A DNA stretch of 64,000 nucleotides, from positions 62,001 through 126,000 of IMG/VR virus record IMGVR_UViG_3300037294_000266; one strand, given 5' to 3'. The position numbers were made by a program, and so were the translations under genes. Numbering within the stretch: position 1 is the stretch's first letter; the number at the start of each line of letters is the position of its first letter. Below are positions 53,062-58,050 of the stretch, one piece after another. Under the pieces are notes generated by a model, which was not told the origin of the DNA, searched no databases, and saw only the letters and a program-made list of their open reading frames with translations.

Positions 53062-53296
53062 GACGATATCCTTTATATTGCGACAATGAAATCATTGTCG
53101 AGGCGGCATAACACCCTACTGGATTTCTCCAGTAGGGTGACAGAGGCTTATTTCGGTTACTGCTTCAACCGTGTCACGTGCTGCGGCGGGTATTGCAACC
53201 AGATCGTACAACAGTCCATCAGGATATTACACATCGAACCATTCCCAGGATGAACCTCCAGGACGGCTAGCCTCTCCATGGTGCGGTGAGGGCGTG

Positions 53297-53512: not shown

Positions 53513-53543
53513 GGGTATACTCCAGTTGATAAATCATCCACAC

Positions 53544-53612
53544 AAGCGGAACCTAAGCTCACACCAAGCCCGAAGGCTATTACAGACAGTGCAATGCGTT
53601 CATATACCGCTT
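53544..53612 (-). ncRNA. Small multibranch structured element with cUUCGg tetraloop
   Basis: Closing stem AAGCGG/CCGCTT, internal ATTGCA/TGTAAT and AGCC-TTCG-GGCT. Confidence 0.4.
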
Positions 53613-53661
53613 CCTACCTTTGATCCCAGCACGTTAGGGAGGCAGCACTAAAATAGTCTTT

Positions 53662-53810
53662 TGGTTCGTGTCGCGATGATATTAGATTCCATAGGCCGGT
53701 CGTAATGAGAGAGACTCTCGTTACTCCTTACTAAGCAGACAGACAGTTTCTCAGGCTGTTCCGTCTACGTTTCTCATCTTGAGCCTCGCCGTTGAGTACG
53801 GCTCTCGGAA
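53662..53810 (-). ncRNA. Three-hairpin structured element ending in CCA
   Basis: GCCGT/ACGGC, AGAC..ACAG/CTGT..GTCT, GTAA-GAGAG/CTCTC-TTAC. The 3' end reads GAACCA. Confidence 0.4.
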
Positions 53811-53812
53811 AT

Positions 53813-53995
53813 TGGCGGGAAATTGAGGATTTGAACCCCCTTCTCCAGACGTCTTTTCTTACCGTTCGGATTCCTGATTAACCCACTGGTCAGGTGGGAT
53901 TTCGCTTGGCCTCAGAACCACCTGAGACGAGCTACTGCCCTATGCACCGATAAGAGTACCGCCTGTCGCATTAAACATGTCTATGCTAAGATCCC
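53813..53995 (-). ncRNA. 183-nt tRNA-like RNA with pseudoknot-containing domain replacing the anticodon arm
   Basis: Acceptor GGGA/TCCC with G-CCA end, D-stem GCAT/ATGC, T-loop TTCAAAT, extended stem CAGGCG/CGTCTG and TCTTATCG/CGGTAAGA, pseudoknot CCCAC/GTGGG with CCTGA/TCAGG. The first G is the G of a TATG motif. Confidence 0.7.
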
Positions 53996-54206: not shown

Positions 54207-54653
54207 TTAAAGGCCGCACCAACCAACTTTAGTGCCGCCAGAATAAGGGACTGCGAGTCCTCGAGCAATAAGCTCATCTCCAACGACTCTGCCGTCTACG
54301 ACCACAGTGGCCAGTAAGCGAAAGTACTTATCACGATCGAGGTTGGTCAGTGTCACTCGTTTACCATTGGCAATCATTTCACCGACAGCGTCACGAGCTT
54401 TTATGGCCAGTATTTTCTCTGCATCACGTTCAGCCTTTGTGGCACAGTCACTCCGCATCTCTGGTGTATCGATGCCATTTACTCTGACTGACAACCGATC
54501 TCCAAAGACATCAGGCAGGTACGGAATCTGGACAGTGAGTGTGTCACCATCGTAGATACTGACAACGTCCTCAGGAATGAGTTTTATCTCTTCAAGAGGA
54601 TACGCTTGAACGGTGCCACATGCCAGCAGAAAACTAAGAAGTAAAATACGCAT
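54207..54653 (-). CDS. Secreted thermonuclease (SNase family)
   Basis: Signal peptide, YDGDT, VRVNGIDTPE, DKYFRLLA, LIARGLA. Confidence 0.9.
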   Translation of the reverse strand: MRILLLSFLLACGTVQAYPLEEIKLIPEDVVSIYDGDTLTVQIPYLPDVFGDRLSVRVNGIDTPEMRSDCATKAERDAEKILAIKARDAVGEMIANGKRVTLTNLDRDKYFRLLATVVVDGRVVGDELIARGLAVPYSGGTKVGWCGL

Positions 54654-54797: not shown

Positions 54798-54885
54798 TGG
54801 CGGAAGCGGTGAGATTCGAACTCACGGACCCCGAAGAGTCGACAGTTTTCAAGACTGTAGGATTCAACCGCTCTCCCACGCTTCC
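54798..54885 (-). tRNA. trnS: tRNA-Ser(UGA)
   Basis: Complete type II cloverleaf GGAAGCG...ACAGTCT-TGA-AAACTGT...long variable arm...GTTCGAATC...CGCTTCC-G-CCA. Confidence 0.97.
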
Positions 54886-54890
54886 AATAC

Positions 54891-54963
54891 AGGTGCTGAT
54901 ACCGGGAATCGAACCCGAGTCCTCCGTCACCAACAGGTGCGCCTTCTCTGCGCCACTATCTAC
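54891..54963 (-). ncRNA. Degenerate tRNA-like element (intact T-arm, weak anticodon arm, ACCT end)
   Basis: D-stem GCGC/GCGC, T-arm TCGGG-TTCGATT-CCCGG, acceptor 6/7 bp. Confidence 0.6.
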
Positions 54964-54965
54964 CA

Positions 54966-55039
54966 AGTAGATAGACAGGACTTTAACCTGCGACCTCCTG
55001 TCTCGTTTACCGGGACACTACCAGCTGAGCTATAACGGC
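54966..55039 (-). ncRNA. Degenerate tRNA-like element with non-matching acceptor strands
   Basis: TAGCTCAGCTGGTAG D-region, T-arm GCAGG-TTAAAGT-CCTGT. Its 3' strand CTATCTAC pairs with the next element rather than its own 5' end. Confidence 0.55.
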
Positions 55040-55044
55040 GAAAT

Positions 55045-55133
55045 AGGCGGAGAGCCACCTTAGACTTCCTGATGTGCCCGACGGGAGAGCACGGAAGTAA
55101 CGGGTTAGATTAGCACCCTCCAAGGGGCTCTCC
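55045..55133 (-). ncRNA. Y-shaped RNA with long acceptor-like stem and G-CCT tail
   Basis: GGAGAGCC/GGCTCTCC plus CCTTGG/CTAAGG, hairpins GGGT/ACCC and ACTTCC-GTGC/GCAC-GGAAGT. Confidence 0.55.
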
Positions 55134-55137
55134 TGTT

Positions 55138-55258
55138 TGGTCCAAGTATCCGGGTTCGAACCGGTGGAGTATAACATCCGATCGACGTGCGACCATAGTC
55201 GCGTTCGTCATCAGACATCACTCCCAGAGCCACCTCCCAAACCCGATCATAATCTTGG
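55138..55258 (-). ncRNA. 121-nt tRNA-like RNA with long irregular stem replacing the anticodon arm
   Basis: Acceptor CCAAG/CTTGG with A-CCA end, T-arm CCGG-TTCGAAC-CCGG, about 24-bp interrupted stem capped by GCGAC-TATG-GTCGC. Confidence 0.7.
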
Positions 55259-57828: not shown

Positions 57829-57910
57829 CACCTCTAGCGAGTCTCGAAGTCGCACACCGTCGATTAGAATGGCTACCAATCGACTGTCCTACCAATTGGA
57901 CGATAGAGGT
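57829..57910 (-). ncRNA. tRNA-like RNA with 7-bp anticodon stem and 12-nt loop
   Basis: Perfect acceptor ACCTCTA/TAGAGGT, D-arm GTCC-AATTGGTA-GGAC, GTCGATT/AATCGAC, T-loop TTCGAGA. No encoded CCA. Confidence 0.75.
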
Positions 57911-57924
57911 ATAAACGCTGTATG

Positions 57925-58050
57925 TAAGTATGATGGGATTCAAACCCACGTACGCTTTGGTATAGCCAATGGACTGGCACCTCGGCGTTCTAGTCCAACC
58001 GTCCGCGTTACCGGACATTTCACCCTTAAGCCAGGCTCAGGAACATACTC
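57925..58050 (-). ncRNA. 126-nt tRNA-like RNA with three hairpins between the D- and T-arms
   Basis: Acceptor GAGTATG/CATACTT, D-stem CCT/AGG, hairpins GTCC/GGAC, GGACT/AGTCC and TTGG/CCAA, T-arm GTGGG-TTTGAAT-CCCAT. Confidence 0.7.

What the first reader, a model, noticed from the sequence alone, without database searches (positions are those of the whole stretch)
53813..53995. tRNA shell carrying a ~110-nt pseudoknot domain, starting exactly at a late-promoter G
The D-arm, T-arm and G-CCA end enclose a tmRNA-P2-like interrupted helix, a CTCAG/CTGAG hairpin and an H-type pseudoknot (53873-53898). G1 is the G of TATG, the +1 of phiKZ late promoters. It is not a canonical tmRNA: it is half the size, has a D-stem, and has G3-C70 and G73 rather than Ala identity. 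A short frame GCA GTA GCT CGT CTC AGG TGG TTC TGA (AVARLRWF) follows AUAGG, loosely like a resume site.
Basis: partly seen in the sequence, partly recalled or inferred. Interest (0 to 1): 0.85.

Follow-up and report, generated by a model that had tools for sequence, protein, structure and literature searches.

The report
Phage tRNA-like RNA, not a tmRNA
A giant phage related to phiKZ carries, next to its tRNA genes, a conserved 183-base RNA gene with the ends and elbow of a tRNA but a 108-base folded domain in place of the anticodon loop; it is a real structured RNA of unknown job, most like the unexplained "species 1" RNA of phage T4, and it is not a tmRNA.

Summary
The element is real and lies on the minus strand, 53995 to 53813. 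I found seven distinct versions in uncultivated phiKZ-like phages, in at least three different flanking contexts. They come in two types: 183-184 nt, and 202-204 nt with an extra hairpin in the D-loop. Homology runs from about 6 nt before G1 to the CCA.

All eight helices of a tRNA-like model keep pairing. Six pairs show compensatory double changes and several more show compatible single changes. Exceptions are two invariant mismatches in the acceptor stem (U5.U68, C6.U67).

The RNA is about 86% identical between phages whose neighbouring genes are only 68-74% identical at the DNA level.

The tmRNA-flavoured details fail. The TATG "late promoter" reads TTTG in 4 of 7. The short reading frame is frameshifted between the two types. 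G3-C70 and G73 rule out alanine identity.

Rfam and ARAGORN call nothing, even after the insert is removed in silico.

Best reading: a processed, non-decoding tRNA-like stable RNA from the phage tRNA cluster, analogous but not homologous to T4 rnaC. Its function is unknown; a tRNA mimic or scaffold carrying a conserved payload domain is my inference.

The parts
53813..53995 (-). Whole tRNA-like RNA gene, 183 nt. RNA position p corresponds to window coordinate 53996-p.
   Evidence: Homology block shared with L012, L033, L147, L156, L155 and L159/L160. It ends at the CCA and begins about 6 nt before G1.
53989..53995 (-). Acceptor stem, 5' strand (RNA 1-7, GGGAUCU).
   Evidence: Pairs with RNA 173-179. 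Five pairs are invariant; U5.U68 and C6.U67 are mismatches in all 7 sequences.
53813..53823 (-). Acceptor stem 3' strand (RNA 173-179), discriminator G73 equivalent and encoded CCA (RNA 180-183).
   Evidence: Read directly from the sequence. GCCA in 6 of 7 variants; GCCG in L156.
53968..53986 (-). D-arm: 4-bp stem (RNA 10-13/25-28) and an 11-nt loop.
   Evidence: The stem is invariant. The long-type homologs carry a 20-21-nt hairpin insertion in this loop and a GGUUA motif.
53960..53965 (-). Helix at the anticodon-stem position, 5' strand (RNA 31-36).
   Evidence: Two compensatory double changes (A-U to U-A, G-C to U-A) and one G.U to G-C change between the two types.
53846..53851 (-). Helix at the anticodon-stem position, 3' strand (RNA 145-150).
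   Evidence: Partner strand of RNA 31-36.
53948..53955 (-). Extension helix, 5' strand (RNA 41-48), beyond the GUAC/AAAGA internal loop.
   Evidence: 8 bp, 100% paired. U46.G134 becomes U-A in L156 and in L159, one sequence of each type, which suggests separate events.
53857..53864 (-). Extension helix, 3' strand (RNA 132-139).
   Evidence: Partner strand of RNA 41-48.
53933..53947 (-). Conserved joining strand J1 (RNA 49-63).
   Evidence: Nearly invariant across 7 sequences, with 2 variable positions. No pairing partner was established.
53904..53932 (-). Hairpin H3 (RNA 64-92): 2-bp clamp plus 8-bp stem (68-75/80-87) and invariant UGGU loop.
   Evidence: Four compensatory double changes and two compatible single changes; 100% paired.
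53882..53898 (-). Hairpin H4 (RNA 98-114): CCCAC/GUGGG stem. The loop's 3' ACCA is invariant.
   Evidence: The stem is invariant, so it is uninformative. Loop positions 103-105 vary and L159 has an insertion there.
53865..53881 (-). Conserved joining strand J3 (RNA 115-131). It includes the proposed 3' strand of pseudoknot stem 2.
   Evidence: Invariant apart from a 1-nt deletion in L156. Stem 2 is not supported.
53824..53840 (-). T-arm (RNA 156-172): 4-bp stem, 7-nt T-loop, and G156.A172 unpaired.
   Evidence: T-loop A57 is G in the long type. G158.U170 becomes A-U in L156 and in L159.

Best explanation
This is a gene for a non-decoding, tRNA-like stable RNA that belongs to the phage's tRNA gene cluster.

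How it is probably made (inferred): it is transcribed on the minus strand together with the neighbouring tRNAs and small nuclease genes. It is cut out like a tRNA, with RNase P cleaving before G1 (U at -1, G at +1, encoded RCCA) and 3' trimming to the CCA. The product would be about 183 nt.

How it folds: the acceptor/T minihelix and the D-arm form a tRNA-like top half. The anticodon arm continues as a 6+8-bp interrupted helix, capped by a conserved junction with two hairpins and two long invariant single strands.

What it cannot do: it has no anticodon loop and no alanine identity, so it can act neither as a tRNA nor as a tmRNA.

Most likely role (inferred, not shown): a tRNA mimic or scaffold. 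The shell would give tRNA-type processing, stability and access to tRNA-binding machinery, and the conserved 108-nt insert would be the working part. That part could be, for example, a binding site or decoy for a host or phage factor that handles tRNAs.
For: - Discrete gene: homology starts about 6 nt before G1 and stops at the CCA, in at least three different flanking contexts.
- Spread: seven distinct sequences in related uncultivated phiKZ-like phages.
- Selection on RNA structure: 44 modelled pairs are 95.5% paired, with six compensatory double changes. Slid-partner controls give 0-2 double changes and 36-49% pairing. All 9 pairs that differ between the window and L012 stay paired.
- Strand: five G.U pairs per sequence fix the RNA strand as minus.
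- Conservation: the RNA is 86% identical between the window and L012. The adjacent nuclease gene is 68.5% identical and the DNA polymerase gene 73.9% at the DNA level.
- tRNA ancestry of the shell: canonical T-loop, U8, A14, A21 and G53-C61. The covariance model built from the family picks true tRNAs as its next-best hits in 541 kb (tRNA-Asp, 29.8 bits).
- Setting: same strand, 0.8 kb downstream of tRNA-Ser and tRNA-Thr, among HNH and SNase nuclease genes. This is the layout of the T4 tRNA cluster, whose primary transcript yields eight tRNAs plus species I and II RNAs and carries segB (PMC2330249).
- T4 rnaC also has a canonical T-arm next to a terminal stem with tandem U.U mismatches and has no anticodon loop.
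Against: - There are no expression data. The phages are known only from metagenomes.
- Folding energy is no better than that of shuffled sequence.
- The seven sequences fall into two types, so most covariation comes from one deep split.
- The structure-aware alignment was fitted to my model.
- The acceptor stem carries two mismatches, and L156 ends in CCG rather than CCA.
- The functional part of the statement (mimic, scaffold or decoy) rests on no direct evidence.
- No partner protein co-varies with the RNA. The SNase neighbour also occurs in relatives that lack the RNA.
Confidence: 0.55

Rival explanations
1. Miniature tmRNA-like ribosome-rescue RNA. It would be charged, enter stalled ribosomes with SmpB and add a short tag read from the frame that starts after AUAGG.
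For: It has a T-arm, an encoded CCA, a long interrupted helix in the P2 position, and a short open frame ending inside hairpin H3, much as tmRNA tag frames end in helix 5.
Against: - Pair 3-70 is G-C and the discriminator is G in all 7 sequences, so the alanine identity is absent.
- The frame is shifted by a 1-nt indel between the two types, giving AVARLRWF or AVARLGWF against AVAHVGGSAC. Neither has a hydrophobic ...AA-type ending.
- Changes in that stretch follow hairpin pairing, not codons.
- Pseudoknot stem 2 is broken in 5 of 7 sequences.
- No Rfam tmRNA family matches at E<=10, and ARAGORN gives no tmRNA call even at an 80% threshold.
Confidence: 0.04
2. A tRNA gene interrupted by a non-group-I intron that is spliced out to give a working tRNA.
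For: - Related phages carry tRNA-Glu(UUC)-like genes with a hairpin insert of about 40 nt at position 37/38 (L007, L011; variant in L009/L010). L006 has a tRNA-like gene with a 40-nt insert in the equivalent slot.
- The window's own tRNA-like gene at 57829-57910 has an enlarged anticodon loop.
Against: - No 7-nt loop with U33 and a purine at 37 can be made by removing an insert at 37/38. The only U33/R37 join gives an AAA anticodon with G32 (sequence inspection).
- ARAGORN with introns allowed finds nothing.
- The shell without the insert still fails tRNA detection.
- The insert is the most conserved part, with a 42-nt stretch identical between the two types, which is unexpected for a discarded intron.
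- At 108 nt it is too short for a group I intron, and Rfam reports no intron hit.
Confidence: 0.07
3. A cis-acting processing or stabilising module. The tRNA-like fold would serve only as an RNase P 'punctuation' site that separates the upstream mRNA from the downstream structured RNA; the released RNA would have no role of its own.
For: - The gene starts 7-10 nt after the stop codon of an upstream ORF in two contexts.
- In several phages it is followed directly by further conserved structured non-coding sequence.
Against: A punctuation site would need only the acceptor/T minihelix. This reading does not explain the near-invariant 108-nt insert, its covarying hairpin, or the conserved single strands.
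Confidence: 0.12
4. A decaying tRNA pseudogene that acquired an insertion and has no function.
For: - The region is littered with tRNA-like fragments and degenerate tRNA-like genes.
- The acceptor stem is mismatched, the D-loop is non-canonical, and L156 has lost the terminal A.
Against: - Identity is higher than in flanking essential genes.
- Every stem change is compensated or compatible.
- The two acceptor mismatches are themselves invariant rather than drifting.
- The element persists through rearrangements of its flanks.
Confidence: 0.05

Closest known systems
Phage T4 species 1 RNA (rnaC/RNAC), with species 2 RNA (rnaD), from the T4 tRNA gene cluster
   Same: - It is encoded at the distal end of a phage tRNA cluster that also holds a mobile nuclease gene, and it is made from the same precursor as the tRNAs (PMC2330249).
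- It has a canonical T-arm abutting a terminal acceptor-like stem with tandem pyrimidine mismatches, CGAUUCG/CGUUUCG in T4 against GGGAUCU/AUUUCCC here.
- It has no anticodon loop and is longer than a tRNA, at 139 nt.
- Its function is still unknown (PMC3014915, PMC9697503).
- Rfam has no family for it.
   Different: - There is no detectable sequence or model homology: model R1 finds nothing in the T4 region.
- T4 rnaC has no D-arm of the kind seen here.
- The internal domains have different architecture.
- T4 rnaC does not encode CCA.
- The host and phage lineage differ.
tmRNA (SsrA)
   Same: A tRNA-like acceptor/T domain with CCA, joined through a long interrupted helix to an internal structured domain.
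   Different: - It is about half the size.
- Pair 3-70 is G-C and the discriminator is G, instead of G3.U70 and A73.
- A D-stem is present.
- There is no conserved tag frame and no supported pseudoknot.
- No covariance-model or ARAGORN match is found.
Engineered 'tRNA scaffold' RNAs, in which a foreign RNA replaces the anticodon loop to gain tRNA processing and stability (from my own knowledge of the recombinant-RNA literature; not checked here)
   Same: The topology is the same: a structured insert is grafted onto the anticodon stem of an otherwise tRNA-shaped shell.
   Different: Those are artificial constructs. Here the arrangement is natural and conserved, and the shell is itself non-canonical.
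Insert-bearing tRNA-like genes in related phages (L007, L011, L009/L010, L006)
   Same: They occur in the same phage clade and the same tRNA cluster, and they carry a hairpin insert in the anticodon loop.
   Different: - Their shells are near-perfect tRNAs, which ARAGORN calls when introns are allowed.
- Their inserts are about 40 nt and variable in sequence.
- They do not align with this family.
Bacterial Y-RNA-like YrlA (tRNA-like module; from my own knowledge)
   Same: A non-coding RNA with a tRNA-mimicking T/D/acceptor module.
   Different: - In YrlA the RNA termini lie in the Ro-binding stem and the acceptor-like stem is closed by a loop. Here the termini form the acceptor stem with a free CCA.
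- There is no Rfam match.

Membership tests
tmRNA | Recognised by tmRNA covariance models or ARAGORN | tested here: not met
   The Rfam gathering and E<=10 scans give no tmRNA-clan hit on the element. ARAGORN -m finds nothing at the default or 80% threshold.
tmRNA | Alanine identity: G3.U70 wobble pair and A73 | tested here: not met
   Pair 3-70 is G-C and the discriminator is G in all 7 sequences.
tmRNA | Conserved tag reading frame with a resume codon and an in-frame stop | tested here: not met
   A 1-nt indel shifts the frame between the two types, so the peptides differ after residue 3. The substitutions follow hairpin pairing.
tmRNA | Pseudoknot(s) flanking the tag frame | tested here: not met
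   The proposed stem 2 is paired in 74% of cells, has no compensatory change, and every variant breaks a pair. Stem 1 is invariant.
tmRNA | T-arm and 3' CCA of a tRNA-like domain | tested here: met
   The T-loop is canonical, the 4-bp stem shows a compatible G.U to A-U change, and GCCA is encoded in 6 of 7 sequences.
tmRNA | Works with SmpB on stalled ribosomes | not testable with these tools
   This needs binding and tagging assays.
tRNA (including intron-bearing tRNA) | Recognised by tRNA models, with or without an intron | tested here: not met
   No Rfam tRNA hit at E<=10. ARAGORN finds nothing, with introns allowed or not. The shell with the insert removed fails at the default and 90% thresholds.
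tRNA (including intron-bearing tRNA) | A 7-nt anticodon loop with U33 and a purine at 37, directly or after removing an insert at 37/38 | tested here: not met
   Sequence inspection of RNA 37-42 and 138-144. A join at 37/38 puts a pyrimidine at position 37.
tRNA (including intron-bearing tRNA) | Seven fully paired acceptor base pairs | tested here: not met
   U5.U68 and C6.U67 are unpaired in all 7 sequences.
tRNA (including intron-bearing tRNA) | T-loop consensus, G53-C61, D-stem, U8, A14, A21 | tested here: met
   Read from the sequence. G18G19 is present only in the long type.
T4 rnaC-type tRNA-like stable RNA | Encoded within a phage tRNA cluster, on the same strand as the tRNAs | tested here: met
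   tRNA-Ser and tRNA-Thr lie at 54798-54963 (-) and a tRNA-like gene at 57829-57910 (-).
T4 rnaC-type tRNA-like stable RNA | Canonical T-arm next to a terminal stem with internal pyrimidine mismatches; no anticodon loop | tested here: met
   T4 rnaC sequence and fold compared with this family.
T4 rnaC-type tRNA-like stable RNA | Sequence or structure homology to rnaC | tested here: not met
   Model R1 gives no hit at E<=10 in the T4 region L063. blastn of the region against GenBank phages finds no match.
T4 rnaC-type tRNA-like stable RNA | Accumulates as a processed stable RNA during infection | not testable with these tools
   No transcript data exist for these uncultivated phages.

The most novel reading that the evidence does not exclude
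A natural 'tRNA scaffold'. On this reading, phages graft a conserved effector domain onto a deliberately non-chargeable tRNA shell. The RNA is then processed, stabilised and delivered to tRNA-handling machinery such as the ribosome, RNase P, CCA-adding or repair enzymes, or tRNA-targeting defence nucleases and toxins. There it would act as a decoy or regulator. The long-unexplained T4 species 1 RNA would be another example of the same strategy.
Probability: 0.25. Interest if true: 0.8.

Novelty: new variant of a known kind. Interest (0 to 1): 0.55.

Why it matters
Phage tRNA clusters have been known for about 50 years to encode extra tRNA-like stable RNAs (T4 species 1 and 2) whose function is still unknown. 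This family is a second, unrelated example in a very different phage lineage: phiKZ-like jumbo phages, which build a nucleus-like compartment.

The family has a clear secondary-structure model, covariation support and sharply conserved single strands that can be mutated. It therefore gives a concrete object for asking what such tRNA mimics do, for example in the conflict over host tRNA-targeting defences. It also shows that standard tRNA, tmRNA and Rfam scans miss this class entirely.

Tried and rejected
- **Standard detectors.** ARAGORN and Rfam at gathering and at E<=10 do not call the element. ARAGORN with introns, tmRNA mode and relaxed thresholds also finds nothing.
- **GenBank phages.** blastn of the 900-nt region finds no match. 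The neighbouring ORFs give no useful synteny. The nearest isolate, pPa_SNUABM_DT01, has a different tRNA set and no homolog.
- **Exact-word scans.** Scans of IMG/VR with four different conserved words and one gapped pattern found only the window's own contig and one other phage. All other hits were chance matches in coding DNA.
- **Metagenome scan.** It added one more variant and some chance hits.
- **Bacterial and archaeal genomes.** A gapped-pattern scan gave three hits, all rejected by model R1 (best 11.3 bits) and by inspection.
- **SNase-like neighbour as partner.** The idea was rejected. Homologs are widespread in viral contigs without the RNA, and close relatives carry SNase without the RNA. 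The protein has a signal peptide. Its look-ups did, however, yield four further RNA variants.
- **Antisense targets.** A search of the 64-kb window for targets of the conserved single strands found only 8-10-nt matches, roughly what a 64-kb window yields by chance; the shuffle control in that script crashed.
- **Alternative tertiary pairings.** GGUGG/CCACC loses a pair in L012 and L156 and competes with H4. GGG/CCC (56-58/98-100) and the UGGU/ACCA loop-loop contact are invariant, so they cannot be tested.
- **Nearby ORFs.** Pfam and PHROGs scans found no RNA ligase, kinase, CCA-adding enzyme or SmpB-like protein in the ORFs examined.

Full report
**What and where**

The feature lies on the minus strand. 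RNA position 1 is window 53995 and position 183 is window 53813. The window is identical to part of IMG/VR contig IMGVR_UViG_3300037294_000266, which is 266.6 kb long. A baseplate-like protein in the window is 72% identical to that of Pseudomonas phage pPa_SNUABM_DT01 and 33-37% identical to other phiKZ-like jumbo phages.

The element sits in an accessory region that holds:
- tRNA-Ser and tRNA-Thr at 54798-54963;
- a further tRNA-like gene at 57829-57910;
- an HNH/NUMOD4 endonuclease gene, an SNase-like nuclease gene and a Lar-like gene, all on the minus strand.

**Is it detected by standard tools?**

No.
- ARAGORN and Rfam report nothing at these coordinates. That holds for the gathering thresholds and for E<=10, including a scan of only 251 nt.
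- ARAGORN with introns allowed, in tmRNA mode, or at relaxed thresholds is also silent.
- When I removed the insert in silico, the remaining shell still failed ARAGORN at default and 90% thresholds.
- The folding energy is ordinary, with z = -0.78 for the window and +0.45 for a homolog.

The case for a real RNA therefore rests on comparative data.

**Homologs**

GenBank phages have nothing similar. I fetched relatives through the DNA polymerase gene 5 kb away. I also scanned collections for conserved words and looked up contigs encoding close relatives of the neighbouring SNase-like protein.

This gave seven distinct versions:
- short type, 183-184 nt: the window, L155 and L159/L160;
- long type, 202-204 nt: L012, L033, L147 and L156.

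The long type carries a 20-21-nt hairpin inserted in the D-loop and a GGUUA motif there, which looks more tRNA-like than the window's D-loop. All other word matches were chance hits, mostly in coding DNA.

**Boundaries and selection**

The flanks differ completely between contexts. Homology begins about 6 nt before G1 (consensus AGTTWT) and ends at the CCA.

Between the window and L012 the RNA is 86% identical. The adjacent SNase gene is 68.5% identical and the DNA polymerase gene 73.9% at the DNA level. By DNA polymerase, the window is closer to phages that lack the RNA (80-83% amino-acid identity) than to L012, which has it (77%). The gene is therefore patchily distributed and under stronger constraint than its neighbours.

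**Structure**

I built covariance model R1 from a hand-set structure and used it to make structure-aware alignments (A7, A9). Across 7 sequences, the 44 modelled pairs are 95.5% paired. The only non-pairs are U5.U68 and C6.U67 in the acceptor stem, and those are unpaired in every sequence.

Evidence for individual helices:
- The helix at the anticodon-stem position (31-36/145-150) has two compensatory double changes and one G.U to G-C change.
- Hairpin H3 (68-75/80-87) has four double changes and two compatible single changes.
- The extension helix (41-48/132-139) and the T stem each show a G.U to A-U change in L156 and in L159. These belong to different types, which suggests separate events.
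- The D stem, hairpin H4 and most of the acceptor stem never vary, so they give no information.

Controls: partners slid by 1-3 columns give 36-49% pairing and 0-2 double changes. All nine pairs that differ between the window and L012 remain paired. Five G.U pairs per sequence fix the strand as minus.

Caveats: the sequences form two types, so most of the covariation reflects one deep split, and the alignment was fitted to the model.

**The shell as a tRNA**

Present:
- U8, A14, A21 and a 4-bp D stem;
- a 5-6-nt variable region;
- G53-C61 and a T-loop reading UUCRAAU;
- discriminator G and an encoded CCA. The phage's own tRNA-Ser also encodes GCCA.

Absent or odd:
- two mismatches in the acceptor stem;
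- an unpaired G49.A65 equivalent (alternatively U8-A172 pairs, giving an 8/4 arrangement);
- no GG in the window's D-loop;
- no anticodon loop.

The model built from this family picks true tRNAs as its next-best hits in 541 kb of related phage DNA (tRNA-Asp, 29.8 bits). That supports tRNA ancestry for the shell.

1. Pseudoknot. Stem 1 (CCCAC/GUGGG) exists but is invariant. Stem 2 (103-106/119-122) is fully paired only in the window and L155. Every variant seen breaks a pair without compensation: C103A, U104A, G105A and deletion of U119. Pairing is 74% of cells. The claim is not supported.
2. TATG start. It is present only in the short type. The long type has TTTG in two different upstream contexts. 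What is conserved is U at -1 and G at +1. From general knowledge of bacterial RNase P, that combination plus RCCA suits RNase P cleavage. So 5' end formation by processing is more likely than a dedicated late promoter, although this is my inference.
3. Resume-like frame. A 1-nt indel shifts it, and the peptides are AVARLRWF or AVARLGWF in the short type against AVAHVGGSAC in the long type. The nucleotide changes follow hairpin H3 pairing. No coding constraint is visible.
4. G3-C70 and G73 are confirmed in all sequences. They exclude the alanine identity that tmRNA needs.

**What remains conserved and unexplained in the insert**

- Two long single strands: 49-63 and 115-131.
- The UGGU loop of H3.
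- The ACCA at the 3' side of the H4 loop, whose other positions vary.

UGGU and ACCA could form a four-pair loop-loop contact. UGGU could also pair with an NCCA 3' end. Both motifs are invariant, so neither idea can be tested with these data.

**Closest known thing**

The T4 tRNA cluster encodes eight tRNAs, the segB homing endonuclease and two stable RNAs, species 1 (rnaC) and species 2 (rnaD). All come from one precursor that terminates after species 1 (PMC2330249). Their roles are still unknown (PMC3014915, PMC9697503).

T4 rnaC is 139 nt. It has a canonical T-arm directly next to a terminal stem, CGAUUCG/CGUUUCG, with tandem U.U mismatches, and it has no anticodon loop. Rfam has no family for it.

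The present family shares that setting and design. That includes pyrimidine mismatches in the middle of the acceptor-like stem. It is not homologous to rnaC by sequence or by model. I therefore file it as a new variant of that loosely defined kind, not as a member of the T4 family.

**Mechanism**

Shown:
- It is a discrete, conserved gene for a structured RNA with a tRNA-derived shell, located in the tRNA cluster.
- Its features are not those of a tRNA or a tmRNA.

Inferred:
- It is co-transcribed with the cluster.
- RNase P cuts at G1 and the 3' end is trimmed to CCA.
- A stable RNA of about 183 nt accumulates.
- The shell provides tRNA-type processing, stability and access to tRNA-binding factors, while the insert is the working part.

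Which factor it addresses is unknown. No gene co-varies with it. The SNase-like neighbour is a secreted-type nuclease with a signal peptide, and it also occurs in relatives that lack the RNA.

**Rivals**

- tmRNA-like rescue RNA, 0.04.
- Spliced intron-bearing tRNA, 0.07. Insert-bearing tRNA-Glu-like genes in related phages make this worth testing, but no legitimate anticodon loop can be restored here.
- Pure processing or punctuation element, 0.12.
- Pseudogene, 0.05.

**Verdict**

This is a real and previously undescribed phage RNA family. It is still of moderate interest as a second, tractable example of the unexplained tRNA-like stable RNAs found in phage tRNA clusters.

Noticed in passing
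window 57829-57910 (-): A tRNA-like gene found only by Rfam (41.5 bits), with an 11-nt insertion in the anticodon loop, giving a 16-nt loop. ARAGORN calls it only at a relaxed threshold, as tRNA-Arg(tct) with a 9-nt 'intron'.
   Followed up: partly
window 53104-53258 (-): A non-coding block of about 155 nt, conserved in L033 (90%) and L012 (82%). In L012 it starts 21 nt after the tRNA-like RNA. It has two hairpins with compensatory changes; the last is GC-rich and followed by UUAU, so it may be the terminator of the cluster. There is no Rfam match.
   Followed up: partly
window 53533-53812 (-): The 280 nt that follow the CCA are 84% identical to L033. The first 40 nt checked are also shared by L147, L155 and L159, and part is shared by L006. 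One hairpin covaries (GAGAG/CUCUC against UGGAU/AUCCA). Small ORFs in this stretch are frameshifted between phages, so it looks like further structured RNA or a leader for the next gene.
   Followed up: partly
L007:16853-17112, L011:17749-17862, L009/L010:16865-16983 (all minus strand): Related phages carry near-perfect tRNA-Glu(UUC)-like genes with a hairpin insert of about 40 nt at position 37/38 of the anticodon loop. The hairpin sequence differs between phages but the pairing is kept. These are not group I introns, and they are missed by default ARAGORN.
   Followed up: partly
L006:15695-15808 (-): A different tRNA-like gene with an 8-bp acceptor stem and a 40-nt insert. It sits immediately upstream of the homolog of the window's downstream block, so it occupies the same slot as the element studied here.
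   Followed up: no
window 54207-54653 (-): An SNase-like nuclease gene with an N-terminal signal peptide. It lies within 1 kb of the RNA in every RNA-bearing contig, upstream of the RNA in some and downstream in others. It is also present in close relatives that lack the RNA.
   Followed up: yes
window about 54965-55020 and 57915-57960 (-): Isolated T-arm-like fragments (a stem with a TTAAAGT or TTTGAAT loop) beside the annotated tRNAs. They suggest tRNA gene remnants in this cluster.
   Followed up: no
L002:21765-21850 (Pseudomonas phage pPa_SNUABM_DT01, record about 171764-171849): An unannotated, degenerate tRNA-like sequence with a good T-arm and a 6-bp acceptor stem but a poor anticodon arm. 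It lies just after a small CDS in the tRNA region of the nearest cultivated relative.
   Followed up: no
window 55043-55138 (-): A 96-nt block that is 92% identical to L033 and 80% identical to L012. It overlaps a 56-aa ORF (55007-55177). Whether it is coding or RNA is undecided.
   Followed up: no
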